IMG/VR virus record: IMGVR_UViG_3300044646_001937
Location: 124,001 to 188,000 of that record
Strand: one strand, 5' to 3'
DNA length: 64,000 nucleotides
The notes beneath the pieces are model-generated. The model worked only from the letters and a program-made list of their open reading frames with translations. It was not told the origin of the DNA and searched no databases. Made by a program: the position numbers and the translations under genes. Position 1 is the stretch's first letter; each line of letters opens with the position of its first letter. Below, in pieces: positions 3,521 to 21,015 of the stretch.

Positions 3521-3537
3521 TCATTGAAAAATGCTAT

Positions 3538-5710: not shown

Positions 5711-7222
5711 ATGGACGAGCCAAACATTCTCATTAAATCAGCATTATCCGAAGCAGTTCAAAAGATCAACGGAGGCATGTCCCCTACGGCAGCTCTCAAG
5801 AAAGTTGCGTCTGATTTTGATCTAAACCCCAATTACATTCAGAGAACAGGGGAAGCTTTAAATGTGGCGCTGCATTATAAGCATTTCAAGACAGCCTCCG
5901 ATAGATCTGACGAATTTGAAATTGCAGACATCCCCAAGGCTATTGAAGAAGTTTTTACAGTGAATGAGAAGACCGCTTCAGAATATATCACTGAAACTTT
6001 TGGAAACAATGACGCTAATGAGACGGTGTTTAACTATAACCGCGCACTGTCCAACCCAATCTATAAGCGAGCATTTCTTGAGGTGGTAGGAGCTACGGAA
6101 ACAAATGATTCTTACCCTACCACGTTTAAGACAGTGTATGAAAAGTCTGCAAATTATATCAGCAAACTTGAAAAGTCGGCAGAGGCAGCGGAAGTTGCTA
6201 AGGTTGCAGCAGAGATTGAGTTAAACGACACCTTTTCCACATTGTCAGATTCTTTCAGGAAAGATGCATCCTACAGATCTACGTTTGAAGAATTTGAGTC
6301 ACAAGTATTTGCTAAACACGGAGAAGCAGCTGTTCCCTATATTGATCTACTACATAAAACAGCTTGTCCTAATGATGAGCGTGGAGTGCATGATGATAAA
6401 TACATGATGTTTTCGCAGAGCAAAGAGGCTCAGTTATTTGACCGCCTAATGACCGCAGCCGCTACACTTGTAGAGGCAGAAAAAACAGCAGAAATTAATG
6501 CTGAAAATCTGGCTTACGAAAAAGCCTTTTTAAAAGAGTGTCACCAAATGCTAGGCAAGCAAGCAGAAGAGGAGAAAGAAGAAGCCTCTGAAAAAGATGA
6601 AGTTGAGGAAAAGGGCGAGACTGAAGAGAAAGGCGAAGCGGAAGAAAAAGAGGAAGAAGACCCGGTTTTAGAACAGATTAAAAAAAAAGTCTTAAATCCT
6701 GACGAGAAACAGGCAGCAGCTCTTTCAGAAGATCCTGTCCTTGAACAGGCTATGGAAAAAGACGCTTTTTTAGGTGGGGCTATAAGGGCAGGTGCAGGAT
6801 TGTTAAATACTAGAAGCTTTGGAAAAATGCTGGCCGGCCCGCTAGCGGAGCTTGTAGGAGATCCTGTGACCGAAGCGTTCCATCACAACTTTAAATCTCC
6901 AGCAAAGGCAGTTAAGCCTAACCTTACACTGGATAATATGGAGCGTAGACTTTTATTGCAGGAGCTGATGCTTACTGACCCTATCCTGTCCAAGGTCAAC
7001 CCAGCAAAAGTAGCCAGAGCCTTTGAACAGCTTTTAAGATTATCGCCAGAAATATCCAAACAGAAAGAGGTAGTCAGGGCAGAATTGCGAGCAATGGTTT
7101 CCAGTCAGGCGCTTAGCAAGTTTGATGCGGACTTGCTAGCCAAGACAGATTTGGGTATGCTTAAAAGAAGAGTTGCTACCCAGCAATATAATATGGGAAT
7201 GTCCGATAACTTTAGAATGTAA
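5711..7222 (+). CDS. Putative prohead core/internal protein, K-x-A rich, with acidic tract
   Basis: 16 K-x-A motifs, an EK-rich acidic tract, a duplicated EDPVLEQ, and a C-terminal domain starting FLGGAIRAGAGLL. Confidence 0.55.
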   Translation: MDEPNILIKSALSEAVQKINGGMSPTAALKKVASDFDLNPNYIQRTGEALNVALHYKHFKTASDRSDEFEIADIPKAIEEVFTVNEKTASEYITETFGNNDANETVFNYNRALSNPIYKRAFLEVVGATETNDSYPTTFKTVYEKSANYISKLEKSAEAAEVAKVAAEIELNDTFSTLSDSFRKDASYRSTFEEFESQVFAKHGEAAVPYIDLLHKTACPNDERGVHDDKYMMFSQSKEAQLFDRLMTAAATLVEAEKTAEINAENLAYEKAFLKECHQMLGKQAEEEKEEASEKDEVEEKGETEEKGEAEEKEEEDPVLEQIKKKVLNPDEKQAAALSEDPVLEQAMEKDAFLGGAIRAGAGLLNTRSFGKMLAGPLAELVGDPVTEAFHHNFKSPAKAVKPNLTLDNMERRLLLQELMLTDPILSKVNPAKVARAFEQLLRLSPEISKQKEVVRAELRAMVSSQALSKFDADLLAKTDLGMLKRRVATQQYNMGMSDNFRM

Positions 7223-7227
7223 AATAT

Positions 7228-7605
7228 ATGCCAGCACTACTTAAAATTAAAAGAACTATAGAAAACGACGTCTTCAGAATTAATTTTTCTCTAGACCTTC
7301 TAACCTTATCCGAAGCAGATAAAGAACTTATCCGTAAGTTTGGAGAACCATCAATAAACATAGGAGGTGTTTACTTGGAAGACACTGAAAACGAGTACAC
7401 GCTGCCTGACAAATATCTGCGTGTGCGTACAGACTTACCATACACTCAAGAATTTGATGCTAAATCAAATGAGATTGGGTTTGTCTCTTCTAGAGCACAA
7501 GCCATGGCTTTTGAAGAAGCATTTGTGGTTAAATTTGAAGATGCTTTCACCGCACTTAGAAGCAATACAGATACCTTCACAGGAGAAAGAATTGTAAATA
7601 TTTAA
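7228..7605 (+). CDS. Hypothetical protein (125 aa)
   Basis: Clean ORF tightly packed in the operon, with a TATATG start context. Confidence 0.6.
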   Translation: MPALLKIKRTIENDVFRINFSLDLLTLSEADKELIRKFGEPSINIGGVYLEDTENEYTLPDKYLRVRTDLPYTQEFDAKSNEIGFVSSRAQAMAFEEAFVVKFEDAFTALRSNTDTFTGERIVNI

Positions 7606-7616
7606 CAAGACCTCTA

Positions 7617-9185: not shown

Positions 9186-9186
9186 T

Positions 9187-10629
9187 ATGTACAAGGGTCT
9201 AATTAAATTCAGCTCTACAGACGATTGGAATTGGGATGTCGATCCTGTTCAATTAATTCATAATGTAAATACACTCACAAAAGCAGGAGCAGATAACTCT
9301 GAGCTTAAGACAGAAAAGACAGCTGGGCAGACGGATGCTCTGGTAATTGCCCTTGGAGCTTACGAGGGTACAGGCGCAAACAGAAATGGAGATATTTTTA
9401 AAGAAGCAGAATGTTTAAAACATTACAAAACATTCATTAAATCAGGCAGTCGCAAGTCTGATGGATCATATGATGGAAGAGCTTTAAACAGACATCATAA
9501 GAACAAACCAACAGATCCTAAATACGGCAACATCAAAGCTGCGACGTACAATAATAAGATGAAGCGTATTGAGTTGGTTATTGGACTAGACAACGACAAG
9601 TGCGCAGAAGAAATTCAAAAGCTAGCAGAAGGAAAGCAGATCAATGTGAGCATGGCTGCCAAGGTTGCATATGATAAGTGCACATGGTGTGGACATGACG
9701 CTAAAACAGACAGCGATAGATGTAAGCACATCCCTAAAGATCTTGGTGAGATTAATAAGCGCGGAGAGATGTGTAGCATGGATAATATAGATCCTAAATG
9801 GTTCGAACTTTCTATTGTAGGAAGACCTGCAGACCGTATAGGTATGTCGCTAAAACTTGCTTCAGATAATAACTATATCAAGACAGCAAATGATTATAGA
9901 GACCTGTATCCAGGGTTTACAATTCCTGAAGAAGATAACACATTTCTAAACATCTCAAAATACGCAGATGAAAAAAGAAGCCTTGTCAAGAAACTCGCTG
10001 CAATTGAAAAGCATATTGACGGTGTGATGAAGTCTACGCCAGCAAACTCGAAAGATAAATACCTTAAAGAGCAGCGCTCTAAACTAAGCGAAGCAGATGG
10101 CATATCTGATGACACTATTGAGGAGCTTAGAAAGTTCGAACCATCAAAACTTTTAAAAGCACTAGCAGATCATGGCATTGTCTTCTCTCCAGAAGATTTC
10201 GTTAAATACTTATTTGGAGCAAAAGCTCTAGGGGCTAAGTCAGAAGATATGTTTAGTAAAATCAAGAAGCGCCTACCTTCGATGTTTTCAGACATGGACG
10301 AGTCAGGTGATGATGAAATGAACGATGATAAGTACGAACCTTCTGTGTCTGATATTATGCCTAAAGGTTTACTGAATATGGTCAAAGGACTTTTCGATGA
10401 TCATTCGCTATTTGACAAACCTTCCCATAATCGAATTATGAGAATTACTATTGTAAAAAAATCTCCAAAAGCTAGACTAGCTTTGAAAGAAGAGAATACA
10501 AAAGAGGCTGCAGTAGATGAATTATCTAGGCAATACAGTATATATAAATTGGCTGCATTACGCTATATCAACAGTCAAAACAAGCTAGATGAAGACACAA
10601 TCTTTAATGCTTTGATGCAAAACAGATAA
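9187..10629 (+). CDS. Prohead (capsid maturation) serine protease, HK97/assemblin-type fold, with Zn-finger insertion and C-terminal extension
   Basis: Motifs NRNGDIF, RHHKN (candidate catalytic His), VSMA (candidate catalytic Ser), CTWCGH..CKH, and FELSIVGRPAD (cf. L.EVS.V..PA of HK97-type proteases). Lies upstream of the scaffold and capsid genes. Confidence 0.8.
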   Translation: MYKGLIKFSSTDDWNWDVDPVQLIHNVNTLTKAGADNSELKTEKTAGQTDALVIALGAYEGTGANRNGDIFKEAECLKHYKTFIKSGSRKSDGSYDGRALNRHHKNKPTDPKYGNIKAATYNNKMKRIELVIGLDNDKCAEEIQKLAEGKQINVSMAAKVAYDKCTWCGHDAKTDSDRCKHIPKDLGEINKRGEMCSMDNIDPKWFELSIVGRPADRIGMSLKLASDNNYIKTANDYRDLYPGFTIPEEDNTFLNISKYADEKRSLVKKLAAIEKHIDGVMKSTPANSKDKYLKEQRSKLSEADGISDDTIEELRKFEPSKLLKALADHGIVFSPEDFVKYLFGAKALGAKSEDMFSKIKKRLPSMFSDMDESGDDEMNDDKYEPSVSDIMPKGLLNMVKGLFDDHSLFDKPSHNRIMRITIVKKSPKARLALKEENTKEAAVDELSRQYSIYKLAALRYINSQNKLDEDTIFNALMQNR

Positions 10630-10636
10630 AAAGTGC

Positions 10637-10665
10637 TTGGAACCTCCAACAAATTAAGATAACAT
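10637..10665 (+). promoter_or_regulatory. sigma70-type promoter TTGGAA-N17-TAACAT
   Basis: Intergenic, with a 17-nt spacer. Confidence 0.5.
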
Positions 10666-10686
10666 TTAAGAACAAATTAACCCACT

Positions 10687-11817
10687 ATGTTAAACAAAAT
10701 ACTATCAAAACTCGCTGCTGAACAACCAATTGATCCTGCGGCTGCACCACAAACCGAAGAGATGCATGAAGCTGCAGAAACCCCACAGATGGAAGCAGCT
10801 GAGCACGCTCCAGGCGGATATGAAGAAGCTGGAGAAGGCGGCGGAGATGAGCTTGCACAGATCGAGCAATTGATTTCACAACTTTCCCCAGAAGAAGTTC
10901 AACAGCTGATTCAAGAACTTGAGGGAGGAGGAGCTGGCGCAGGAGGCGACGATACAGCCAACCTCTCGCAAGCAATTGAAGGACATCTCGCAGAAACGCC
11001 TGAAGCCTCAGTCCCTGAAGCTCCAGAAGAAAAGCAGGCAGCTCTTTCTTTTGTTAAGTCTGCGTCATACATTCATGGGTTTTTAAAGTACGCAACCGAT
11101 CAGGGTGTCGATATTCATCAGGCAGTTGACCTGTATGACAGTGCACTATCTCAAGCCATTCACGATCTCAAAGTAGCCTCTTTGAAAGGTAATCAGACAA
11201 AGCTGGATGTTGATAAAGACGGCAAAATCGAAGCATCTGATTTGGCAAAATTGAGAGCAGGCAAAGGCAAGACCGTAAAAAAGGCAAACGTCGGCGACGC
11301 CTTCACCGCAGCAGGAAGAGCTCTTCGAGGAGGTCTTCCTGACAACGTGACAGAAACATTACAGGGGTTACCTCAGCAGGGCGCAGAAGCATTGCGTGGC
11401 GTTGCCGATAAATTAGACCCAGGATTTTTAGAGCAATTAAAAGCGCAAGCCGGCAATGCCGTTAGTGGTGCGGGTAACTTTATGCGAGAGCATGGCATTG
11501 ATCCAACAATCGCAGCAGCGCTTGGCGGAGGTGCTGCTTTAGGCGCTGGAGGCATGGGGCTATACAAACATCTTACTCGTCCAAAGCAAGAGGAAGAAAT
11601 GAAGATGGCTTCTTACTACGATGGATTATTTGAAAGAGCTTCGGAATATGGTCTCTCCCCAGATGAAACGATTAAGCTTGCTGGCTGGTGGGACACTATT
11701 AAAGAAAAAATGCCCCAAAGAGCAGGAATTCCTGGAGCTGTAGGAGGACCCGCACCAATTCCAGGAAGAATGCCTGAAGGCAAGCCTGTTACAGGCGGCA
11801 CAGCTAAAGCTAAATAA
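10687..11817 (+). CDS. Modular internal head protein (acidic region, EF-hand-like loop, glycine zipper)
   Basis: 8 K-x-A motifs, a DVDKDGKIEASD loop, AALGGGAALGAGGMGLY, and two copies of the Y..G...A...G module. Confidence 0.55.
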   Translation: MLNKILSKLAAEQPIDPAAAPQTEEMHEAAETPQMEAAEHAPGGYEEAGEGGGDELAQIEQLISQLSPEEVQQLIQELEGGGAGAGGDDTANLSQAIEGHLAETPEASVPEAPEEKQAALSFVKSASYIHGFLKYATDQGVDIHQAVDLYDSALSQAIHDLKVASLKGNQTKLDVDKDGKIEASDLAKLRAGKGKTVKKANVGDAFTAAGRALRGGLPDNVTETLQGLPQQGAEALRGVADKLDPGFLEQLKAQAGNAVSGAGNFMREHGIDPTIAAALGGGAALGAGGMGLYKHLTRPKQEEEMKMASYYDGLFERASEYGLSPDETIKLAGWWDTIKEKMPQRAGIPGAVGGPAPIPGRMPEGKPVTGGTAKAK

Positions 11818-11830
11818 CAAAAACAAACTA

Positions 11831-11859
11831 TTTACACTGTAATAAAAAAAGTATAAAAT
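11831..11859 (+). promoter_or_regulatory. sigma70-type promoter TTTACA-N17-TAAAAT
   Basis: Intergenic, 17-nt spacer, followed by an A/C-rich leader. Confidence 0.6.
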
Positions 11860-11881
11860 CAAACAATCAACAACCAAATAT

Positions 11882-12781
11882 ATGGCAAAACTAACAAAAC
11901 ACGCAGAAGTATTAAGTCAGCTCCACTCGATGGTTAAAAAGCAGGCAGAAGAAGCTCAGAAGAATATCTCCGGAGTTCCCGGTGGTGATGTTAAATCTGT
12001 AAGCGTTAGCGATCAGCATGAGTCGACTAACAAGAATTCTGTAGGTCCTGAAAATGTGGCGCAGGGTTATCACCAAAAGCCTTCCGAAGATTCCGCAGAG
12101 CCTCTCTCAGGGTCTAAGAGCGCTAGCGATCTTGGTGCAGAAATTCTGGACATCATCCGCAAGCAGGCAGATGCACAGGATTCCGTGACAGGTAAACCAG
12201 GTGACGTTAAGTCTGAAAGCGTTGGAGACGATCAGGAGAATGTTGATAAGAACAGCGTGAAACCCGAGAACAATAAGCAGGACTACAGCCAGAAAGGTTC
12301 AACTGACGACTCCAAGCCACTAGCCGGCGCCAAGAAGGCTGAAGTTGAAGAATTGGCCGCTAAGGTTGCCAGCTATGAATTAGGTCGTCAGTTTTGTGCA
12401 GCCCTTTTAAAGTCTGCATCTGACAGATTTGAACCTAACCAGGAAGAGCTTATGAAGGAAGCAGGTCGCCGTGATTTCGATCAGTTGATCGCGCAGGCTG
12501 CGTCTGAACTTGAAAGCACAGAAGAAGCCGAAAAGCAGGGAGCCGCACATTTTGATGAAATTACAAAGCAGGCCGCACTTAACAAGGCATTAGAAGAAAA
12601 TGCTCTGTTGACTCAGAAAATTGCTGAGTATGAAAACTATATCAAGACCGCCCAGGAGCAGTATCAAGCAGAAACAGCTGCAGCTGCAGCTCAAGAGCAG
12701 CAAGTCAAATTGGCTGAAGCTGTCGCCGATATTGTTTTGAGTAAGTTAAAGTCTGAAGTTGTCCCTGCTGCAGGAGAATAA
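11882..12781 (+). CDS. Putative capsid scaffolding/prohead core protein
   Basis: Acidic and helical with a C-terminal coiled coil. Has 12 K-x-A motifs and two ~60-aa internal repeats. Lies between the protease and capsid genes. Confidence 0.6.
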   Translation: MAKLTKHAEVLSQLHSMVKKQAEEAQKNISGVPGGDVKSVSVSDQHESTNKNSVGPENVAQGYHQKPSEDSAEPLSGSKSASDLGAEILDIIRKQADAQDSVTGKPGDVKSESVGDDQENVDKNSVKPENNKQDYSQKGSTDDSKPLAGAKKAEVEELAAKVASYELGRQFCAALLKSASDRFEPNQEELMKEAGRRDFDQLIAQAASELESTEEAEKQGAAHFDEITKQAALNKALEENALLTQKIAEYENYIKTAQEQYQAETAAAAAQEQQVKLAEAVADIVLSKLKSEVVPAAGE

Positions 12782-12796
12782 CTTTAGTTAGCGTTT

Positions 12797-12958
12797 ATGC
12801 CTGCTGACTCACAAACTAGTGATAGTATTGAGCAGCAGGCATTGAATGCTATAGCTCATTTACCTCCAGAGGATAAAAAGAAGATCCTCGAATATATCCA
12901 CAGCATCATTAATCTAGAAAAAGTTAAAAATGACCAAGGAAGCTCTACACAAGATTGA
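12797..12958 (+). CDS. Small unannotated protein (53 aa, MPADSQTSDSIEQQALNAIAHLPPEDKKKILEYIHS...)
   Basis: Not in the ORF track. Fills the gap, has a TTTATG start, and its helical LPPEDKKKILEYI resembles LSPEEVQQLIQEL in ORF 10687. Confidence 0.55.
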   Translation: MPADSQTSDSIEQQALNAIAHLPPEDKKKILEYIHSIINLEKVKNDQGSSTQD

Positions 12959-13322
12959 AGAATTTGTCAAAATAGCTCTACATGAGATTAATGACCTTAG
13001 GCAGCAGCTAGCTGCCCAAACTACAAAGATTGCATCAGAAGAGCTGCAGAAGGACAAAGAATTGGAAAGCGCTTTAAAGAAAGCTGCTGAAGCTATGTAC
13101 AACTCAGACTTTATTAACGACGAAGAGGAAAAATTCACGTTTGTTAAAAAGGCTAAAGAAGATTCTAAGTACCTAGCAAGAGTTGTTGAGCGTGTGTGTA
13201 ATGCAGCTGATGTAGCTTACATGGGCAAAACAGCCAAAGTAAAATCCTCCAATCACTCTGATGACCCTGTGGTAAGGAGAGCCTTTGGTTACGATAATAA
13301 CTACAGCCTTTTAGACGAATAA
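12930..13322 (+). CDS. Small coiled-coil head/scaffold-associated protein
   Basis: At least 6 K-x-A motifs in 130 aa, and a DDPVV motif like the EDPVL of ORF 5711. Confidence 0.55.
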   Translation: MTKEALHKIEEFVKIALHEINDLRQQLAAQTTKIASEELQKDKELESALKKAAEAMYNSDFINDEEEKFTFVKKAKEDSKYLARVVERVCNAADVAYMGKTAKVKSSNHSDDPVVRRAFGYDNNYSLLDE

Positions 13323-13326
13323 TATT

Positions 13327-13746
13327 ATGAACAACACTCAGCAAGCATATGTTAACGGATTTATTAAAAGGGCAGCTGAAAACGGTTATTCTGAAGACGA
13401 AGCACTTAATCTGCTTAAGCAAGCAGCCGATCCAGCTAATGATGTGCAACCTGGCACAGCTTCTTTAATCTCTCCTGTAGCAGGAGGTTTATTGGCAGCT
13501 CAAGGGTTAGGCGCAATGGTCGGGCATAATTATGCACCTATTAGCGACAAAGAATTACGTGAAGAAATGGCCTACTCTGAAGATCCATCAATCAGCAAAG
13601 CTCTTAAGTATCTTTTAGTTCCTGGCTATTTCGGCTATCGCCAAGCTAAGAACCAAAGACTTGAGTCTGCTTACGATAAATACAGAGATGCGCAGCGTCA
13701 GCAAAACCCGATGATGGGACAGCAATCACAAATACAGCAATATTAA
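13327..13746 (+). CDS. Putative internal head cargo protein with N-terminal leader module
   Basis: N-terminal AYVNGFIKRAAENGYS..LLKQA, followed by hydrophobic PVAGGLLAAQGLGAMVG. Confidence 0.5.
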   Translation: MNNTQQAYVNGFIKRAAENGYSEDEALNLLKQAADPANDVQPGTASLISPVAGGLLAAQGLGAMVGHNYAPISDKELREEMAYSEDPSISKALKYLLVPGYFGYRQAKNQRLESAYDKYRDAQRQQNPMMGQQSQIQQY

Positions 13747-13753
13747 AATATTG

Positions 13754-13782
13754 TTGACTATAGTAATTTTTTTTAACATAAT
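13754..13782 (+). promoter_or_regulatory. sigma70-type promoter TTGACT-N17-CATAAT for the decoration/capsid transcript
   Basis: Near-consensus hexamers with a 17-nt spacer, upstream of a ~110-nt leader. Confidence 0.65.
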
Positions 13783-13899
13783 ATTTGTATAACTTTGCAT
13801 TAGAACATTTCTAGAAAACCTTGATCGGTAGCTGGGGTGGGAAGGCGAAGCGACAAAAACAACAACAAACAACAAAAACAAAATAGGAGATAGATAAAT

Positions 13900-14397
13900 A
13901 TGATTAACTTCAAAAAAGGACCCGCTCTTAGCTTGCACCAAGTAAATTTCATTGGTAAAGCTGTGGACGGCGAAGACATTGAAGCAGGCCATGTGGTTCG
14001 TCTAAATGATAACGATGGAGTTGTTGAAGTTCTCAAGGGCGCTTCCAGTTCCAGTGTTTCCAAAGACGCAGTCTACGGGTTTGCTATTAACAACCAAGAC
14101 GCAGGAGACGTTATCGAATCAGGTGTTATCGGTGTGTATGCACTTGATGGCGCTTCGGTGATCGAAACAGATAAGTTGCCAGAAGGTACAGTACCTAGCG
14201 ATTACGCTCTTGGCGCACAGGTAACCACAAATACCGCAGGTGAAATTATCACACTGCCTGGTGGGTTTACCGGTAAGGTGCTTGGTCAGGTTGAAGGTTA
14301 TCGCGACCTTCCAAAAACCAAGGAAATTATCGTTGACGGCAAAAAGGTCAAAGTTCAGGGACTTGTTTCCTTCTTGGGCATCAAACTCGCTAGCTAA
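13900..14397 (+). CDS. Putative capsid decoration/cement protein
   Basis: 165 aa and beta-rich (IEAGHVV..VYGFA..G..V..G.V pattern). Immediately upstream of the MCP. Confidence 0.6.
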   Translation: MINFKKGPALSLHQVNFIGKAVDGEDIEAGHVVRLNDNDGVVEVLKGASSSSVSKDAVYGFAINNQDAGDVIESGVIGVYALDGASVIETDKLPEGTVPSDYALGAQVTTNTAGEIITLPGGFTGKVLGQVEGYRDLPKTKEIIVDGKKVKVQGLVSFLGIKLAS

Positions 14398-14425
14398 CCT
14401 TAACCAATAGATTAAAATAAAATAT

Positions 14426-15385
14426 ATGGAAAAAATCGCAAATCAAAGAGTGTTCAACGATACGTTCGTTGAAATGGTTAAAGCTGGCGAAGAAAAGAAG
14501 GCAGCAGTGTCTGCACAGTCTTTCACTCGCAACAAGCTTCGTGAAGAAAGCTTCACGGAAAAGATCATCACCCCTATCGACATCAGCAATGATGACCTCG
14601 ACAAGGCTGAGAATCCTGAGCTTCTTGTTAAGTGGAATGATCGTGAGCCTGATACTGCGCCTGCAGTGACAATCCCATTGGGTGTTGTTCCTGACATGTT
14701 CCAGTTCTCTGGTACTCGTTATCCTTCCTACTTCACTCGTATTACGAGTCCGAAGTTCAACAAGGACATCGACCAGCTCCGTAGCTATGATTACGACATC
14801 CGCGCAATCATGCTTGAGTTGAGCACCAAGGACATTGCAACCGAAATCGACACACGCTTTATGCAGCGCGTGGACAGCATCATCGGTCCAGTCAACGCAG
14901 CCAACACTCTCAACGGCATTGGGCTTCCACAGAATGTCACCATCAGCGGTGGTATTACTCGTGAAAACGTCGCAGAAGCATTCAAGGTCATTCAGCGCCT
15001 GAAGGTTCCATTTGGTCCCTCCCAGCCTGATGGCGGCGAAAGCAAGGGCGTTATGCTCATGAACAACGTCACTGCACAGGACTTCGTTAAGATGAGCCGC
15101 AGTGAAGTTGGTGGTGATCTTGCACAGGAAATGTGGGTGAATGGTCTCCCATCCAAGACTCTCTTGGGTGTTAAGCCGATCTACACAATCAAGCGTGACC
15201 TCGTCAAGGATGGCGAAATCTACTTGTTCTCTTCCGAAGAATTCTTCGGTAAGTACTACAGATTGCAGCCATTGACTGTGTTCATGAAGAACGAAGCATA
15301 CTTCTTGGAGTACTTCCAGTACATGAACCTCTCACTCGCAATCGGTAACGTGAAGGGTGTTGTGAAGGTCAGCTTCAACGCTTAA
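14426..15385 (+). CDS. Major capsid protein (HK97 fold)
   Basis: 319 aa. Strong C-ending codon bias (TTC, AAC, ATC, GAC) typical of a highly expressed gene. Spine-helix-like LSTKDIATEIDTRFM and C-terminal LAIGNVKGVVKV. Follows the protease and scaffold genes and is followed by a strong terminator. Confidence 0.85.
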   Translation: MEKIANQRVFNDTFVEMVKAGEEKKAAVSAQSFTRNKLREESFTEKIITPIDISNDDLDKAENPELLVKWNDREPDTAPAVTIPLGVVPDMFQFSGTRYPSYFTRITSPKFNKDIDQLRSYDYDIRAIMLELSTKDIATEIDTRFMQRVDSIIGPVNAANTLNGIGLPQNVTISGGITRENVAEAFKVIQRLKVPFGPSQPDGGESKGVMLMNNVTAQDFVKMSRSEVGGDLAQEMWVNGLPSKTLLGVKPIYTIKRDLVKDGEIYLFSSEEFFGKYYRLQPLTVFMKNEAYFLEYFQYMNLSLAIGNVKGVVKVSFNA

Positions 15386-15411
15386 GCGATACTAGAGTTA
15401 GTGATTTAATG

Positions 15412-15441
15412 AGGGGACCCTTTAACCAGGGTCCCCTTTTT
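15412..15441 (+). terminator. Intrinsic terminator after the MCP
   Basis: Stem-loop AGGGGACCCT-ttaacc-AGGGTCCCCT followed by a T run. Confidence 0.85.
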
Positions 15442-15447
15442 AATGCC

Positions 15448-15475
15448 TTGATATGATGTTTAAATGCATTATAAT
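15448..15475 (+). promoter_or_regulatory. sigma70-type promoter TTGATA-N16-TATAAT, probably giving a leaderless transcript
   Basis: The -10 box ends 6 nt before the ATG at 15482. Confidence 0.55.
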
Positions 15476-15481
15476 AATCTT

Positions 15482-15715
15482 ATGAATAACGAAAACATTC
15501 TAGCAGAGTTCGAAAGTTTCATTGAGAAATCAGCAATGGTGGCTCCTCAGCAATCTACAGGAACTAATATGCAGATGGAAGGATCTGAAGGCATTGCAAG
15601 CACACCAGCCATGGGTGCTCCACAACCAAGGATAATGCCTACAGGTAACTTCAATACAGGAGCGGGCGCACCTCCTCCACAAAAGGCTAAGGCATTAACC
15701 AACAAGCCTCAGTAA
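15482..15715 (+). CDS. Small low-complexity protein with a K-x-A-terminated N-terminal helix
   Basis: MNNENILAEFESFIEKSA followed by a Pro/Gly/Gln-rich tail. Start 15482 preferred because 15464 lies inside the predicted promoter. Confidence 0.55.
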   Translation: MNNENILAEFESFIEKSAMVAPQQSTGTNMQMEGSEGIASTPAMGAPQPRIMPTGNFNTGAGAPPPQKAKALTNKPQ

Positions 15716-15718
15716 TTC

Positions 15719-16165
15719 ATGGCTACACCAATACTCACAAGCGAGGAAGTGAGACTTTTCCTGCAGGACAGGGAAGAGTTAAATCCTCTTTTACTAGGAG
15801 TTAGATTTACTCCTGAAATGATCGAACAGGCAATGATCAACACAGTTGATTATTATAATCTAATGAACCCTCCCACAGGAGTAATGTATTCTCTAGAATC
15901 TTTTCCATACAGATCATTACTTCTATTAGGTACAGCTTCTTACCTCTTAAGATCAGGAGCCATCAATGAAGCTGCGAATCAGTTGTCCTATGCAGCAGAC
16001 GGTGTACAGGTTAACGACAAGGATAAAGCGCAAATATTCTCATCTTTAGCTCAGAGTTTACAAGCAGACTTTAAAGAACTGGGACAGCAGATTAAAATGA
16101 ATCAGAATATAGCTCAAATCTATGGAGTTAAGCATTCGGAATACATTTATCGTCGCAGATACTAA
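15719..16165 (+). CDS. Putative head-tail adaptor/neck protein
   Basis: 148-aa helical protein just after the capsid genes. Pattern EEVRLFLQD...IEQAM...LSYAADGVQV. Confidence 0.55.
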   Translation: MATPILTSEEVRLFLQDREELNPLLLGVRFTPEMIEQAMINTVDYYNLMNPPTGVMYSLESFPYRSLLLLGTASYLLRSGAINEAANQLSYAADGVQVNDKDKAQIFSSLAQSLQADFKELGQQIKMNQNIAQIYGVKHSEYIYRRRY

Positions 16166-16332
16166 TGAGCGATAAAACATTAAAGCAAGGCATAACCCAG
16201 ATAGGAGAAGCCGCAAAGATACTTCAGAATAGGATAGTAGCAGCCAAAGCTAATCCATTTCTGGGATTTAAGCTGTATGTGAAGATACTCATTAAAAAAG
16301 CTAAGAATTTCGTTGGCACAAATCAATACTAA
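16165..16332 (+). CDS. Small unannotated basic protein (55 aa, MSDKTLKQGITQIGEAAKILQNRIVAAKANPFLGFKLYVK...)
   Basis: Not in the ORF track. Overlaps the upstream gene by TAATG, and its stop abuts the ATG at 16333. Confidence 0.65.
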   Translation: MSDKTLKQGITQIGEAAKILQNRIVAAKANPFLGFKLYVKILIKKAKNFVGTNQY

Positions 16333-17151
16333 ATGATTGGAACTAAAAGAGTTTTTAAAAAAGTAGAGATTATCCCAGAGTGGGTTAATGGTCATTTCGT
16401 GCAATGGCAAATAGACCCTTTCTTTAAAGCCCCTCGACCATACAACTTTTCTTTACAGATATCTGAGACAGACAACTTTTCAGATATTTTGAGAGAGAAG
16501 ACAAATCTAGGAGATGTCTTTTTCACAGTAGATGATTTTAAATTGAAACAGTCTGCTGGAGGCTTCTACTACTATCGCATACAGCTAACAACTGGTGACG
16601 GTAAGAAATATAGCTCACAGCCGATAATGTTTGGTTATAGTATTCAAGAGCAGAGAAAGTATGCGATGGCCGCAGACGGTATTCGTAAAGAAATCCTATT
16701 GTGTAGATATGCAGGCACACAGGCTTGGCTATTACGCAGAAAGACATACAGCGCAGCTACCACAGTAACATCCAAGAACATAGACCCTGTGTCAGGAGTA
16801 CCCATAACAGATACACAGCATGAAGATTATGGTGTAGGTATAGATGGAGGATATTTTGATCCTGTGCCCTGCATGTACCATATAGAATCTAGCAGCCAAG
16901 ATAAACAGCTATCCCCTGACGGTATAGGTGTAAAAGAAACATACGCCTTTAACGTCAGAGCTCCGGGCTATCCTTTGTTTGAGATAAGAGATGTGTTGTG
17001 TGATATTAACGGAGGGCTTAGATATAGCATACAAGCCAGAAACTCTAAAAACTTCCCAGGAACGAGTATCACATTGTTTCAAAAAGCCACACTCATGCAG
17101 ATCCCAAGTACAGACACAATCTACTCAATTCCAATACCTGTAACCGTATAG
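16333..17151 (+). CDS. Putative neck/head-closure protein
   Basis: Lies between the adaptor and the tail completion gene. Beta-rich, with an FN3-like N-terminal part. Confidence 0.45.
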   Translation: MIGTKRVFKKVEIIPEWVNGHFVQWQIDPFFKAPRPYNFSLQISETDNFSDILREKTNLGDVFFTVDDFKLKQSAGGFYYYRIQLTTGDGKKYSSQPIMFGYSIQEQRKYAMAADGIRKEILLCRYAGTQAWLLRRKTYSAATTVTSKNIDPVSGVPITDTQHEDYGVGIDGGYFDPVPCMYHIESSSQDKQLSPDGIGVKETYAFNVRAPGYPLFEIRDVLCDINGGLRYSIQARNSKNFPGTSITLFQKATLMQIPSTDTIYSIPIPVTV

Positions 17152-17152
17152 T

Positions 17153-17851
17153 ATGAATACAGATAACACACAAGATTGTACAAATGATATAGGTTACGTA
17201 ACAGCATACGACAGGGAAGTTTACGCTAAAGATGAACGCGTAATGGTACTGACCCCATGGACAGTGCAAAACATTTGCTACGAAGTAATTAAAAACTATA
17301 TGATTGAAAACCCTCCCCAAGATGAAGGGTATAAATTTGCTCAAAAATATAGTCCTGATGATCTAGAGTCAGGAATATCTCTAGAGATAGCATATCATTA
17401 TAAAGATGCTGTAGTTCAAAAACGCCCTGGCATATACGTATCCAGAGGCGAAACCAATTTTGTATTTCCAACAATAAATCAGCTCATAGGTATAAACACA
17501 GCAGAATCAGAAAAGCAAAGATTTGCGATGCTTCAGATGCCTATAAATATTGCTGTAGTAGCTACAAACGTAGGTTTTGCAGAACAGTTGGCAGAGTATG
17601 TATTTAAAATTTTCCTAAGATATCAGGAGGTTATTAAACAGGACTTTTGCATTCGTCAATTTAAGCTGGCATCGCTAGGCGCTCCTCAGTTATACTTGGA
17701 AAGTAAAGATCATATCTTTGTAAACGTTACGCTTTTAGCTACATTTGATATGGGCGCATTGATTAAAGGAGATGATCTCAAGATTAAAACAATGTCTTAT
17801 GCGATTTTTACAAGCTGTGTAGATCAACCACTATCAACTAATCTTTTGTAG
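17153..17851 (+). CDS. Putative tail completion/terminator protein
   Basis: Directly upstream of the sheath. RPGIYVSRG..INIAVVA..AEQLAEYV is typical of tail terminators. Confidence 0.5.
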   Translation: MNTDNTQDCTNDIGYVTAYDREVYAKDERVMVLTPWTVQNICYEVIKNYMIENPPQDEGYKFAQKYSPDDLESGISLEIAYHYKDAVVQKRPGIYVSRGETNFVFPTINQLIGINTAESEKQRFAMLQMPINIAVVATNVGFAEQLAEYVFKIFLRYQEVIKQDFCIRQFKLASLGAPQLYLESKDHIFVNVTLLATFDMGALIKGDDLKIKTMSYAIFTSCVDQPLSTNLL

Positions 17852-17870
17852 TAAATTGTTTCAAAAATTA

Positions 17871-17899
17871 TTGCATTACCCCTCAGTTTCAACTAAACT
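17871..17899 (+). promoter_or_regulatory. sigma70-type promoter TTGCAT-N17-TAAACT for the sheath gene
   Basis: Intergenic, with a 17-nt spacer. Confidence 0.6.
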
Positions 17900-17943
17900 T
17901 AAACTAGTATAAATAAACATATACCGGAGAAATAACTAAACAT

Positions 17944-20769
17944 ATGTACATCACACCTAGAGTATTAATTCAGCAAGAATTCCTGCAGCTACCTGTCTAC
18001 AGTGAATTTCCATTACCTGCTTTCATCATCGGTCCTAACTATTCGCTGCTACGCTACAGCGAACCCAATGAAAAGAACCACACCGCAGCAACTACTAAAG
18101 ACGGCGTGTTACTGGCTACCGAAAACAATTATATTGCTGATGCAGATACTAGCTATGATTTTCCTAATGTTCCTGCAGGCGGAAACATAGACCCTACATA
18201 CACGAAAGTGTATGCTGAGTCTGTTGAAGCGCAATATTTCCCACTACTGTCTTTAGGTAGTGATTCGGGAGACGCCAATGTTGAGTTAGTACCCAGCGTT
18301 TCTGGCGGATACTACAGGAACAAGGTCAGGTTCACTAATCTTGTTATGAAGACCGCAAATAACTACGTCCGTAGCGAATTACTCTCAAATAGAGACGTTG
18401 CGGTGGGTGATGTTATCGAAATTTCCGATCTTGATAATCCTGGAGACACAGCATCTGTCGTACGTGCAAAGATCAAAGCTATTGAACCTGAAACGTACAT
18501 TATTAATGAAGATCTTGCCTCTTATGTCGAAGACATTTACAACAACGAATCTAATACAGCTAACCAGAGCCAAGACTATGGGCTTTCTGGATCTGCCACT
18601 GGCGTTACAGTAGACGTGAACGAAGACTTTGCATATATCGGATATGCAGGGAGAAAGATTGTTACAGATACCTACACAGTCACAGTAACTGTAGGCGGAA
18701 GTCTTACTGCAGCAAGGTTCTCGATTTCTTCAGATAATGGGGCATTTAAAACAAAGACCAATGTAGCATTATCTGCAGGCGTTCTCACGCTAGACGACGC
18801 TTCAGGCAATAATGTTAAACTTGAGTTTTCACTCGCAGAAGGAGTGACATTCACAGCCGCCACAGTGTGGACTTTGAACGTTGAAGCTGCAGTTACACAA
18901 GTCACTCCTACCGTTACAGGCACATACTCCGGAGAAGCAGACATAGTCTACACCCTCACGGTGGAGCGTGGTGGCGCATTCTATGATGGAACTAACTCTA
19001 CAACCTGCGCTAGGATTTTGGTTAAATCTTCTATCGTAGACACCGCCTCGTTAACTTTACCCAGGAAGGCTACACCTGTATTCCAATTGGGAGGCCTAGG
19101 CTTGTCGGCAGTGTTTTCTGCAGGTAGTGTTGGTGTCGGTACGGATTATGAAGGTCTTGTGGCAGGCGATGTGTACTATGTATCAGTTGTTGCAGCTAAG
19201 CACGGCGCAGTCACTATTGTGGAATTTGCTGAAACGTTACCTGATTCTTTATTTGACGCAGCAAATAAAACAGCCTCATTATTCTTGACTCAAAACTCAA
19301 TACAATTGAATGAAGTTAAGAACACACTAACAGACACCAGAAACTGGACACAGGACGAAGCTTACGTGACAGTAAACTCAGGCGCAACCACATCAGTCAG
19401 CTCTATTATCGTTGCAGGATCTCCTGCAGAATTACCTATCAAGAAAGCAAAATTGTTCATTGAATATAGAGCCTTGTTGCAAAACAATATTGTGGCAATT
19501 GACTCTGTGCGTAGTCAAGCAGATGTCCTTGCCAAACTTGGCACAATTCACCCTGACAACCCTCTTGCTCAGGGTGTAAATGACGCTGTCTTAAACGCAG
19601 CCAATCAGCTAGTGTACTTCATTGGTGTAGCTACAGATGATCTGGCTGGCTACCTAAACGCAATCAAAATCTCTGAAAAGAGCGACAAGGTTTACGGGTT
19701 TGTGCCACTTACCTTCGATCGCACAATTCAGGACGCTGTGGTTGCACACGTCAACGCATACAGCACTAGAGAAGTTGGACGCTGGAGAGTTGCATGGCTT
19801 TCCGTACAGGACAATAAAGAGCGCATGATCTATGATAGCGCCGAATACACCGCCACAGTTACCAACGACTTGCTCGGCAGAACAAGATTACTGACAATCG
19901 AAAATGCCAAGTTTATTGAGGATGGGGTACGCGCAAACGACTCAATCCGCATTAATTTTAGCGCTACATCGGACGGCAAGTTAACCTATGATGAGTATAT
20001 TGTTGACAGTGTACAGACCAATACTACACTGTTGTTGACCCATTCATTACCATATGCAATTACACCGAGCGGTGGAGCAAAAGTTCAGGTTGTAAGAAAC
20101 TACACCAAGAGTGAGCGTGCCTACAACCTAGCTAAGATAGGTGGAGACTATAACAATAGACGCGTTCGTTGCGTATTCCCTGATACCTTTAAGTATAAGG
20201 GCGTTACGAAGCAAGGCTATTTCGCCGCTGCAGGCTTGGCAGGTCTCAGGTCTGGTGTTGTTCCTCACCAGGGCTTAACCAACTCCGAATATCTCGGAGC
20301 AGACGACCTTAGCAAGGTTGTTATTGATTTCTCTCAGGATGAGCTGAATGTTATGGCTGAGCAGGGTATCTGGATCATTACACAGGAAGTTATTGGCTCA
20401 ACTCCATATGTGAGGCATCAATTGACCACTGATGAGCGCAGCTTGAACACGTCGGAAGACTCTATCACTACGAACGTAGATAGTATTAGCTACGCTCTCA
20501 AGAAAGTCTTGTCACCGTTTATCGGTAGGTTCAATATTAATCCTGATAACGTGGCTGTTATTAGAGCTGCCGTCGTGGCAGAACTTACATTTAGGTCATC
20601 CAACACATACACTGCCCGCGCAGGAAACCAGTTGGTGTCATTCACTCCAGCAACCGACATCATCAAGCTTGAAGCAAATCCAACATTCAAGGACATGATT
20701 GATATTGAAGTGCGCTTGAATGTGCCTTACCCAATCAACTACATTAACCTGAAATTGATTGTTGGCTAA
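17944..20769 (+). CDS. Contractile tail sheath protein (941 aa)
   Basis: N-terminal YITPRVLIQQ..PAFIIG. C-terminal AAAGLAG..LTN, VRHQLTT, and IDIEVRLNVPYPINYINLKL, typical of sheath C-termini. Confidence 0.85.
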   Translation: MYITPRVLIQQEFLQLPVYSEFPLPAFIIGPNYSLLRYSEPNEKNHTAATTKDGVLLATENNYIADADTSYDFPNVPAGGNIDPTYTKVYAESVEAQYFPLLSLGSDSGDANVELVPSVSGGYYRNKVRFTNLVMKTANNYVRSELLSNRDVAVGDVIEISDLDNPGDTASVVRAKIKAIEPETYIINEDLASYVEDIYNNESNTANQSQDYGLSGSATGVTVDVNEDFAYIGYAGRKIVTDTYTVTVTVGGSLTAARFSISSDNGAFKTKTNVALSAGVLTLDDASGNNVKLEFSLAEGVTFTAATVWTLNVEAAVTQVTPTVTGTYSGEADIVYTLTVERGGAFYDGTNSTTCARILVKSSIVDTASLTLPRKATPVFQLGGLGLSAVFSAGSVGVGTDYEGLVAGDVYYVSVVAAKHGAVTIVEFAETLPDSLFDAANKTASLFLTQNSIQLNEVKNTLTDTRNWTQDEAYVTVNSGATTSVSSIIVAGSPAELPIKKAKLFIEYRALLQNNIVAIDSVRSQADVLAKLGTIHPDNPLAQGVNDAVLNAANQLVYFIGVATDDLAGYLNAIKISEKSDKVYGFVPLTFDRTIQDAVVAHVNAYSTREVGRWRVAWLSVQDNKERMIYDSAEYTATVTNDLLGRTRLLTIENAKFIEDGVRANDSIRINFSATSDGKLTYDEYIVDSVQTNTTLLLTHSLPYAITPSGGAKVQVVRNYTKSERAYNLAKIGGDYNNRRVRCVFPDTFKYKGVTKQGYFAAAGLAGLRSGVVPHQGLTNSEYLGADDLSKVVIDFSQDELNVMAEQGIWIITQEVIGSTPYVRHQLTTDERSLNTSEDSITTNVDSISYALKKVLSPFIGRFNINPDNVAVIRAAVVAELTFRSSNTYTARAGNQLVSFTPATDIIKLEANPTFKDMIDIEVRLNVPYPINYINLKLIVG

Positions 20770-20775
20770 CCTATC

Positions 20776-21015
20776 ATGACTTCGTTTGAAGTAGGATTCA
20801 TTAAATACGCTGAAGAATGTGGGTTATCCAATGAAAGGATAGCCCACATTCTTAAAAGAGCCGCAGATTATCCTGAAGTATCCAGCTTATTCAAACAACT
20901 TCCAGAAGCAGAAGAAGAATCTCCAGAGCATCTCGACGATATGAATAATCTTATGCAGCAGGATTTAATCGACAGACAAATGCTTGAAGACGCACAAAAA
21001 CTGAAAATGCAATGA
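20776..21015 (+). CDS. Small acidic protein carrying the head leader module
   Basis: MTSFEVGFIKYAEECGLSNERIAHILKRA matches the module in ORFs 10687 and 13327. Confidence 0.6.
   Translation: MTSFEVGFIKYAEECGLSNERIAHILKRAADYPEVSSLFKQLPEAEEESPEHLDDMNNLMQQDLIDRQMLEDAQKLKMQ

What the first reader, a model, noticed from the sequence alone, without database searches (positions are those of the whole stretch)
11056..20865. Shared ~30-aa leader module on unrelated proteins: candidate capsid-targeting address tag
Seen: SYIHGFLKYATDQGVD (10687, ~11065), SYYDGLFERASEYGLSPDETIKLA (10687, ~11611), AYVNGFIKRAAENGYSEDEALNLLKQA (N-terminus of 13327) and SFEVGFIKYAEECGLSNERIAHILKRA (N-terminus of 20776). The consensus is [YF]xxG[FL]xxxAxxxG[LYV], then in three of four copies a short helix ending in K-x-A. 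The sequences downstream are unrelated to each other. Known: T4 internal proteins carry a cleavable capsid-targeting sequence, and encapsulin cargo carry loading peptides. Inference: this is a portable helix-turn-helix tag that docks cargo in the prohead and is then removed by the K-x-A protease. It could predict the virion cargo genome-wide and serve as a packaging tool.
Basis: partly seen in the sequence, partly recalled or inferred. Interest (0 to 1): 0.82.

Follow-up and report, generated by a model that had tools for sequence, protein, structure and literature searches.

The report
Scaffold-derived capsid-loading tag in a jumbo phage
A 30-residue two-helix module, built into this uncultured large phage's head-scaffold protein, also sits at the very start of at least ten otherwise unrelated proteins. 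A conserved Lys-x-Ala motif separates it from each of them, so it is most likely a removable address tag that loads cargo into the capsid, as phage T4 does with a different tag.

Summary
All four copies lie at the stated places. A profile built only from other metagenomic proteins recovers exactly those four in the six-frame window (E 3e-20 to 5e-4; next hit 0.07).

The module is a helix-turn-helix of about 30 residues (AlphaFold pLDDT 85-95 in the scaffold-like protein). It matches no Pfam, PHROG or PDB family. Copies 1 and 2 are internal modules of the scaffold-like protein encoded just after the prohead protease. Copies 3 and 4 are true N-terminal leaders.

A profile search finds 709 protein clusters with the module. 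Multi-copy proteins are scaffold-like. 47 of 62 single-copy proteins carry it within their first 12 residues, followed by unrelated sequence.

The same genome holds a second locus, about 60 kb upstream of the window, with seven N-terminally tagged genes and one C-terminally tagged ATP-grasp enzyme.

K-x-A is by far the commonest conserved tripeptide pattern in 19 ortholog alignments (40 sites against 16 for the next). All 40 sites lie in eight genes of the head region, none in seven neck and tail genes. K-x-A lies at nearly every tag-passenger junction.

It is a functional analogue of the T4 capsid targeting sequence, not a relative of it.

The parts
11056..11178 (+). Module copy 1 (type A), internal, aa 124-164 of the scaffold-like protein: K-S-A | SYIHGFLKYATDQG-VD-IHQAVDLYDSALSQAIHDL-K-V-A
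   Evidence: AlphaFold gives H126-138, a turn, then H143-164, with pLDDT 91-95. Conserved in all 13 relatives.
11602..11682 (+). Module copy 2 (type B), internal, aa 306-332 of the scaffold-like protein: K-M-A | SYYDGLFERASEYGLSPDETI-K-L-A
   Evidence: AlphaFold gives H301-320, a turn, then H325-341, with pLDDT 85-89. The K-x-A before it is conserved in 13 of 14 sequences.
13327..13425 (+). Module copy 3, N-terminal leader of the 139-aa protein, ending L-L-K-Q-A
   Evidence: E 3e-20. AlphaFold gives H3-18, a turn, then H23-33. In the family alignment a K-x-A lies between the tag and the conserved C-terminal domain.
20776..20862 (+). Module copy 4, N-terminal leader of the 79-aa protein, ending I-L-K-R-A
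   Evidence: K-R-A is conserved in 13 of 14 orthologs.
10687..11817 (+). 376-aa scaffold-like protein carrying copies 1 and 2. It has an acidic N-terminus, is all-alpha with disordered linkers, and has an EF-hand-like loop at 11200-11253.
   Evidence: It lies directly after the protease. AlphaFold model. It has 8 K-x-A against 3.9 expected. Weak Pfam EF-hand and dockerin hits.
13327..13746 (+). 139-aa tagged protein: tag, variable linker, then a conserved C-terminal domain of about 70 aa of unknown function
   Evidence: No Pfam or PHROG match.
20776..21015 (+). 79-aa tagged protein, encoded just after the tail sheath gene
   Evidence: Orthologs in 13 of 13 relatives. The neighbouring 941-aa protein is the sheath.
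9187..10629 (+). 480-aa prohead protease, the presumed K-x-A enzyme
   Evidence: phrog_18299 head maturation protease, E 2.4e-9. It has 10 conserved K-x-A sites, including K-L-A just after the catalytic domain at aa 223-225.
14426..15385 (+). Major capsid protein. Conserved K-K-A at aa 24-26 (nt 14495-14503) is the likely maturation site.
   Evidence: 28% identical to the MCP of Salmonella phage Arash. The K-x-A aligns with K-E-A in the Arash and Vibrio phage D69 MCPs.
11882..12781 (+). 299-aa K-x-A-rich protein, a second scaffold or core candidate, without the module
   Evidence: 11 conserved K-x-A sites. 12 observed against 4.3 expected.
12930..13322 (+). 130-aa K-x-A-rich helical protein
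   Evidence: 4 conserved K-x-A sites. 7 observed against 1.9 expected.
5711..7222 (+). 503-aa head-module protein whose N-terminal half holds regularly spaced conserved K-x-A sites
   Evidence: 8 conserved sites. 16 observed against 5.3 expected.

Best explanation
The module is a helix-turn-helix of about 30 residues. It began as a repeated element of this phage clade's head scaffolding protein, the gene just after the prohead protease. In this subclade it has been copied onto the ends of many other proteins.

Inferred mechanism:
1. The module binds the partner that the scaffold copies bind inside the assembling prohead. That partner is either the inner face of the major capsid protein or the scaffold core itself. 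Any protein carrying one module is therefore co-assembled into the prohead.
2. The prohead protease then cuts after K-x-A. This breaks the scaffold proteins into short peptides, trims about 26 residues from the capsid protein, and severs the tag from its passenger.
3. The passengers stay in the head with the DNA and probably enter the host. They include predicted enzymes and many short, mostly basic, Ala/Gly/Pro-rich polypeptides.

Shown here: the module, its predicted fold, its positions, its spread, the diversity of passengers, and the head-specific conservation of K-x-A.
Inferred: binding, packaging, cleavage and ejection.
For: Real and conserved:
- An independent profile recovers all four copies.
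- Orthologs in 13 related IMG/VR phages keep the module.
- 709 protein clusters match at E<=1e-3.

Scaffold origin:
- 2-3 copies sit in the protein after the protease in every relative.
- Divergent copies sit in the same gene of Salmonella phage Arash (gp223) and Vibrio phage D69.
- In Arash the module occurs nowhere else in the genome.
- In 27 of 102 multi-copy proteins the last copy is at the C-terminus.

Fold: helix-turn-helix with pLDDT 85-95.

Tag behaviour:
- 47 of 62 single-copy proteins carry it within the first 12 residues.
- Conservation stops abruptly after L-L-K-Q-A.
- Passengers fall into 35 BLAST clusters of 47 representatives, and 34 of 44 in loci.
- Tagged genes occur in tandem arrays. 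L028, in this same genome, has seven N-tagged genes and one C-tagged R2K ATP-grasp. L018 has five tagged genes and L019 three.

K-x-A as the protease site:
- 40 conserved sites against 16 for the next pattern. All 40 lie in eight genes of the head region, none in seven neck and tail genes.
- It is enriched 2-3.6 fold in the head genes of this genome alone.
- It lies at the aligned position in MCPs only 27-28% identical.

K-x-A at junctions:
- 139 of 159 internal copies start with K-x-A.
- 36 of 47 N-terminal tags have K-x-A at module position 28, and 44 of 47 have K-x-[AS].
- The C-terminal tag is preceded by K-L-A, and the DUF3008 fusion has K-K-A before its tag.

Precedent: the T4 CTS targets a diverse set of internal proteins to the scaffolding core and is removed by gp21 (PMC3012670, PMC7411985).
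Against: - There is no experimental or structural evidence of binding, packaging or cleavage. No cultured phage carries the tagged genes, and no multimer prediction was possible.
- The 79-aa tagged gene lies in the tail gene block.
- The module holds a nearly invariant K-R-A inside helix 1. So K-x-A cannot always be cleaved, or else the tag is destroyed rather than simply released.
- Passengers are not specifically depleted of K-x-A: 75 observed against 94.5 expected, but K-x-G and K-x-S are depleted as much.
- Many passengers are short and of low complexity, with no recognisable function.
- Only weak Pfam support exists for the enzyme passengers: R2K_2 at 25.6 bits against a cut-off of 26.2, and Peptidase_M13 at E 0.004.
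Confidence: 0.55

Rival explanations
1. The module is only a scaffold self-assembly or coat-binding element. The small proteins that carry it are accessory or decoy scaffold proteins, for example size or nucleation regulators. They would be degraded and expelled like the scaffold, not delivered as cargo.
For: - The module is ancestral to the scaffold-like protein and is confined to it in Arash.
- Many passengers are short and Ala/Gly/Pro-rich.
- The window's 139-aa protein is a conserved head-module gene.
Against: - Passengers lack the 2-3.6 fold K-x-A enrichment of the scaffold and core proteins.
- Some passengers are large predicted enzymes: an R2K ATP-grasp, and HExxH proteins of up to 800 aa.
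- The diversity of passengers (34 BLAST clusters of 44, 28 of them singletons) and the tandem arrays encoded away from the head genes fit an arsenal better than an assembly factor.
Confidence: 0.2
2. The module is a leader peptide for post-translational modification of the downstream 'core' peptides, in the manner of RiPPs, by the neighbouring ATP-grasp ligase and HExxH peptidases. It would have nothing to do with the capsid.
For: - Tandem genes with a sharply bounded conserved leader and hypervariable C-termini.
- An ATP-grasp gene and HExxH genes lie in or beside the arrays.
Against: - The same module is repeated inside the scaffold-like protein next to the prohead protease.
- The junction motif K-x-A is the motif conserved across the head-region proteins and the MCP N-terminus.
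- The ATP-grasp proteins themselves carry the tag.
- Passengers reach 800 aa.
Confidence: 0.05
3. The module is a DNA-binding helix-hairpin-helix or HeH-like motif that anchors internal proteins to the packaged genome.
For: - The profile search of PDB sequences gave weak multi-repeat matches to topoisomerase V HhH repeats and TALE repeats.
- 33 of 47 passengers are net basic.
Against: - Those matches cover only the generic 'G-L-S/T-x-x-E-A' turn, each repeat scores below significance, and no Pfam HhH, SAP or HeH family matched.
- The tag itself is neutral to acidic (sequence).
- It lacks the G-h-G hairpin of HhH motifs (my knowledge of that motif).
Confidence: 0.05
4. The similarity is a chance resemblance between amphipathic helices.
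For: Copies 1 and 2 are weak by leave-one-out within the window alone.
Against: - Recovery by an independent profile.
- Conservation in 13 relatives.
- 99 clusters at E<=1e-10.
Confidence: 0.01

Closest known systems
Capsid targeting sequence (CTS) of phage T4 internal proteins IPI, IPII, IPIII and Alt
   Same: - An N-terminal detachable address on a highly diverse set of head-internal proteins.
- It directs them to the scaffolding core.
- It ends at the prohead-protease site and is removed at maturation.
(T4 facts from PMC3012670 and PMC7411985.)
   Different: - No sequence similarity.
- The T4 CTS is about 10-20 residues and is removed by gp21. This module is a folded helix-turn-helix of about 30 residues, bounded by K-x-A.
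- Here the same module is also built into the scaffold-like protein in 2-3 copies.
- It can sit at the C-terminus.
- Targeting is proven for T4 and only inferred here.
C-terminal helix-turn-helix coat-binding domain of P22-type scaffolding proteins
   Same: - A small helix-turn-helix in a scaffolding protein.
- In 27 of 102 multi-copy family members, and in Arash and D69, the last copy lies at the extreme C-terminus. That is where the P22 domain binds coat protein (my knowledge of P22).
   Different: - No detectable sequence relation. The profile search of PDB sequences returned no scaffolding protein.
- It is present in several copies.
- It is bracketed by protease sites, whereas P22 has no prohead protease and recycles its scaffold.
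- It is exported onto other proteins.
N-terminal propeptides of ejection proteins in giant phages of the SPN3US and phiKZ kind
   Same: - Large phages with a packaged protein bolus.
- Head proteins carry propeptides removed by the prohead protease.
- The propeptides are proposed to target proteins into the prohead (PMC7411985).
   Different: - Those propeptides are long (111-130 residues), are not reported as one shared portable module, and are cut at A-x-E.
- Here one short module is shared and the motif is K-x-A.
Encapsulin cargo-loading peptides
   Same: A short portable tag that docks cargo to the interior of an HK97-fold shell.
   Different: Encapsulin tags are short extended C-terminal peptides and are not removed (my knowledge). 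This tag is helical, mostly N-terminal and apparently cleaved. There is no sequence relation.

Membership tests
T4-type capsid targeting sequence | Short propeptide at the N-terminus of head-internal proteins | tested here: met
   47 of 62 single-copy proteins carry the module within the first 12 residues. So do 46 of 58 tagged ORFs in 15 loci. It is longer than the T4 CTS: about 30 residues against 10-20.
T4-type capsid targeting sequence | Sequence relation to the T4 CTS | tested here: not met
   No Pfam or PHROG family matched any tagged protein. tblastn of the 139-aa protein against 50,697 phage records found nothing. This is analogy only.
T4-type capsid targeting sequence | Ends at the prohead-protease cleavage motif | tested here: inconclusive
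   K-x-[AS] lies at the junction in 44 of 47 N-terminal tags. K-x-A is the head-specific conserved motif. Cleavage itself was not observed.
T4-type capsid targeting sequence | Shared by a diverse, fast-changing set of passengers | tested here: met
   35 BLAST clusters of 47 passengers, and 34 of 44. By eye, the arrays of two phages whose MCPs are 97% identical show no shared passenger start. I did not test that pair directly.
T4-type capsid targeting sequence | Sufficient to load a foreign protein into the capsid | not testable with these tools
   Needs a reporter fusion in an assembly system.
P22-type scaffolding coat-binding helix-turn-helix | Helix-turn-helix fold in a scaffolding protein | tested here: met
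   AlphaFold gives two helices and a turn for each copy, with pLDDT 85-95 in the scaffold-like protein and 58-69 in the 139-aa protein.
P22-type scaffolding coat-binding helix-turn-helix | Sequence or fold match to the solved domain | tested here: not met
   The profile search of PDB sequences listed no scaffolding protein. Foldseek against PDB and BFVD gave no match with E<=0.001.
P22-type scaffolding coat-binding helix-turn-helix | Binds the major capsid protein | not testable with these tools
   No multimer prediction or binding assay was available.
Encapsulin cargo-loading peptide | Short C-terminal extended peptide that is retained on the cargo | tested here: not met
   The module is helical and mostly N-terminal, and it is followed by a putative cleavage motif.
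HhH, SAP or HeH DNA-binding motifs | Match to the family profiles | tested here: not met
   No such Pfam hit at E<=0.1. The PDB matches to topoisomerase V and TALE repeats cover only the turn and are individually insignificant.

The most novel reading that the evidence does not exclude
An uncultured clade of ~200-kb phages has turned a piece of its own scaffold into a universal loading tag. It uses the tag to pack a rapidly changing arsenal of ten or more effector proteins per genome into the capsid for injection with the DNA, including peptide-ligase-like and metallopeptidase-like enzymes. The tag and the K-x-A rule would then let the injected proteome be read from sequence alone, and would give a second capsid-loading handle of different design from the T4 CTS.
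Probability: 0.45. Interest if true: 0.75.

Novelty: new variant of a known kind. Interest (0 to 1): 0.62.

Why it matters
- If the tag works as inferred, the packaged and probably injected proteins of a whole clade of uncultured large phages can be listed from sequence alone. That is normally possible only with virion mass spectrometry.
- It shows how such a tag can arise, by copying a scaffold module onto other genes.
- It marks hypervariable tagged gene arrays as a place to look for new anti-defence or host-takeover proteins.
- The K-x-A rule is a new prohead-protease specificity. It can be tested at once in the cultured relative, Salmonella phage Arash.
- A short, folded, self-removing loading tag could also serve for packing proteins into phage capsids, as the T4 CTS has been used.

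Tried and rejected
- Pfam and PHROG scans of the tagged proteins and their neighbours: no family for the module. Only the protease, the MCP and weak EF-hand hits appeared.
- tblastn of the 139-aa protein and of an array protein against 50,697 phage records: nothing.
- tblastn of the DUF3008-tag fusion: it hit cyanomyoviruses only through its DUF3008 part.
- Profile against PDB sequences: only generic helix-turn matches, to TALE repeats, topoisomerase V and a proteasome beta subunit.
- Foldseek of the scaffold model against PDB and BFVD: nothing significant.
- ESM Atlas on the tag: generic two-helix hits only.
- The Arash paper's virion proteome lists 116 proteins and gives no N-termini, so it cannot test cleavage.
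- Whole-genome scan of Arash for tagged cargo: none.
- Test for purging of K-x-A from passengers: inconclusive, because K-x-G and K-x-S are depleted as much.
- The search for related loci with the 51-copy alignment failed for lack of a conserved stretch. It worked with the N-terminal subset.
- phmmer of the protease against PDB sequences: no hit.
- Cluster names: all members are 'hypothetical protein'.

Full report
**Context**

The window is one strand of the structural region of an uncultured phage of about 200 kb. It matches IMG/VR contig IMGVR_UViG_3300044646_001937 (204,454 bp) at 100%.

Gene order, all on the + strand:
- an RNA polymerase beta fragment, 36-1232
- several unknown genes
- a prohead protease, 9187-10629 (phrog_18299, E 2.4e-9)
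- a 376-aa scaffold-like protein, 10687-11817
- two more helical proteins, 11882-12781 and 12930-13322
- the 139-aa protein, 13327-13746
- a 165-aa protein
- the major capsid protein, 14426-15385, 28% identical to the annotated MCP of Salmonella phage Arash
- neck genes
- a 941-aa tail sheath, 17944-20769 (Atlas score 0.96 with sheath families)
- the 79-aa protein, 20776-21015
- tail genes

**Observation**

- That test is circular. I therefore built a profile from 24 N-terminal modules of other metagenomic proteins. It recovers all four copies, at E 3e-20, 4e-5, 1e-5 and 5e-4, with the next hit at 0.067.
- The regions outside the modules are unrelated to each other.
- Copies 1 and 2 are internal to one protein. 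Copies 3 and 4 are true leaders.

**What the module is**

AlphaFold2 with alignments gives helix-turn-helix for each copy.
- In the scaffold-like protein: H126-138 then H143-164 (pLDDT 91-95), and H301-320 then H325-341 (pLDDT 85-89).
- In the 139-aa protein: H3-18 then H23-33, at lower confidence.

No Pfam, PHROG, PDB-sequence or Foldseek match identifies it.

**Distribution**

All 13 related IMG/VR loci keep the module in the orthologs of the three window proteins. Their scaffold-like proteins hold two or three copies.

A 51-copy profile against 1.84 billion representative proteins finds 709 proteins at E<=1e-3 and 99 at E<=1e-10. Two architectures account for the best 150.
- Scaffold-like proteins of 200-550 aa with two or three copies. 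139 of 159 internal copies begin with K-x-A. In 27 of 102 proteins the last copy ends the protein.
- Single-copy proteins of 78-800 aa. 47 of 62 have the module within the first 12 residues (consensus MNTQQAYI[EN]GF[VI]KRAxEYG[FL]SxxEAxELLKQA). Their downstream parts form 35 BLAST clusters of 47.

Alignment of 25 such leaders shows conservation ending abruptly after L-L-K-Q-A.

**More tags in the same genome**

A pattern scan of IMG/VR with the leader alignment returned a second locus on the window's own contig (L028, contig 51,763-71,858), about 60 kb upstream of the window. It contains:
- seven consecutive genes that start with the module, one of them behind a DUF3008-like segment joined through K-K-A
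- a 417-aa R2K-type ATP-grasp protein (25.6 bits, cut-off 26.2) with the module at its C-terminus, preceded by K-L-A
- an inserted DUF559/Vsr-like endonuclease gene
- a 512-aa HExxH protein with a DUF5661 end
- collagen-like fibre genes

Relatives have similar arrays. Two short contigs carry five (L018) and three (L019) tagged genes in a row, some with HExxH motifs. Over 15 loci there are 58 tagged ORFs, 46 of them N-terminal. The 44 N-tagged passengers long enough to compare form 34 clusters, 28 of them singletons.

**K-x-A**

I aligned 19 ortholog families (window plus up to 13 relatives) and counted every X-x-Z pair conserved in at least 75% of sequences.
- K-x-A is first with 40 sites. The next pattern has 16.
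- All 40 sites lie in eight genes of the head region: 5711 (8), protease (10), 10687 (3), 11882 (11), 12930 (4), MCP (2), the 79-aa protein (1) and 4571 (1).
- None lies in the seven neck and tail proteins, despite about 600 conserved pairs there.
- In the window alone, K-x-A is 2-3.6 fold over expectation in most genes from 5711 to 15385, and about 1 fold in most tail genes.
- The MCP site K-K-A | AVSAQSF at aa 24-26 aligns with K-E-A | GAAMS in the MCPs of Arash and Vibrio phage D69, which are only 27-28% identical.
- The Arash and D69 scaffold-like proteins are also dense in K-x-A | [AS].

I conclude that K-x-A followed mostly by A, E, S, G or N is very probably the cleavage motif of this clade's prohead protease. 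This is an inference from conservation, not an observation of cleavage.

**Tag and K-x-A together**

- 36 of 47 N-terminal tags have K-x-A at module position 28, and 44 of 47 have K-x-[AS].
- The 139-aa family keeps a K-x-A between the tag and its conserved C-terminal domain even where the linker differs.
- The 79-aa family keeps K-R-A in 13 of 14 sequences.
- The C-terminal tag and the DUF3008 fusion each have K-x-A on the passenger side.

So whichever end the module is on, a K-x-A lies between it and the passenger.

**Origin**

In Arash gp223 and D69 0271, the genes just after the protease, three shorter copies occur at the C-terminal end (E-K-x-A | A-V-x-x-L-I-x-x-G-x-x-F-x-E-A-V-E-L-V-K-E-A |). 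A scan of the whole Arash genome finds them nowhere else. The module is therefore an old scaffold element, and its use as a tag is an innovation of the window's subclade.

**Interpretation**

The best reading is a scaffold-derived capsid-loading tag that the prohead protease removes. It is functionally like the T4 capsid targeting sequence. That sequence is the only conserved part of a diverse set of internal proteins, directs them to the scaffolding core, and is cut off by gp21 (PMC3012670, PMC7411985). It is not related to the T4 sequence.

The receptor is unknown. The terminal position of scaffold copies recalls the coat-binding helix-turn-helix of P22-type scaffolds (my knowledge). Binding to the scaffold core or to the protease is equally possible.

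**Caveats**

- Nothing shows binding, packaging or cleavage.
- The 79-aa gene lies in the tail block.
- The module has an invariant K-R-A inside helix 1. Either structure protects some sites or the tag is destroyed.
- Passengers are not specifically depleted of K-x-A.
- Support for the enzyme annotations of passengers is weak.

**Rivals**

- Accessory scaffold proteins that are degraded rather than delivered (0.2).
- A RiPP-like leader (0.05).
- A DNA-binding motif (0.05).
- Chance (0.01).

**Novelty**

The principle is known from T4. The module, its scaffold origin, its use at either terminus, the tagged gene arrays and the K-x-A specificity are, as far as these searches show, undescribed. 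All cluster members are named 'hypothetical protein', and the literature searches found no description.

Noticed in passing
window 11200-11253: An EF-hand or dockerin-like calcium-binding loop, KLDVDKDGKIEASDLAKL, lies in the scaffold-like protein (weak Pfam hits: Dockerin_1 E 0.005, EF-hand_7 E 0.0075). It is conserved in relatives. It also appears directly after the N-terminal tag in some array proteins (P0162; L023 ~4217; L027 ~5766; L029 ~11809). It may be a second portable element.
   Followed up: partly
window 5711-7222: A 503-aa protein of unknown function has eight conserved K-x-A sites. Seven of them are spaced about 25-70 residues apart within the first 220 residues, as if its N-terminal half is cut into short peptides.
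   Followed up: partly
window 14495-14503: The K-K-A in the MCP N-terminus aligns with K-E-A in the MCPs of Salmonella phage Arash and Vibrio phage D69. This predicts a mature N-terminus at residue 27.
   Followed up: yes
window 17944-20769: The 941-aa protein with no Pfam or PHROG hit is a large tail sheath, by ESM Atlas features and structure. The 79-aa tagged gene follows it directly.
   Followed up: partly
window 36-1232: A fragment-sized RNA polymerase beta subunit gene (phrog_3015, phrog_2962), as in phages with split multisubunit RNA polymerases. It carries no tag.
   Followed up: partly
L028 2343-4934 (same genome, outside the window): An 863-aa multi-domain protein with KTSC and MazG domains lies next to the tag array. 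It resembles the 'polyvalent' injected proteins discussed in PMC7824862. Its N-terminus (FLQKRAASSGI) looks like a degenerate first helix of the module.
   Followed up: no
L028 6860-7228 and 7606-7962: Two paralogous small hydrophobic (apparently membrane) proteins, both ending TTKPKTKTI, are interleaved with the tagged genes. A DUF559/Vsr-like endonuclease gene (8895-9344) is inserted in the array.
   Followed up: no
L028 9636-9992; L018 41-862: A DUF3008-like segment (MPFKSNAQRRWMYANEPEMAKKW...) is fused upstream of a tag through K-K-A. The DUF3008 part alone is shared with 144 cyanomyovirus records. One of those hits is annotated as a virion protein.
   Followed up: partly
window 40264-63242: Three giant ORFs of 2237, 1773 and 3616 aa lie at the end of the tail region. 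K-x-A is at chance level in them.
   Followed up: no
L004, L005, L009, L016 ~1750-2500 and L011, L013-L015 ~3470-3600: Relatives encode an extra small tagged protein between the orthologs of window genes 7228-7605 and 7617-9185. The window phage lacks it.
   Followed up: partly
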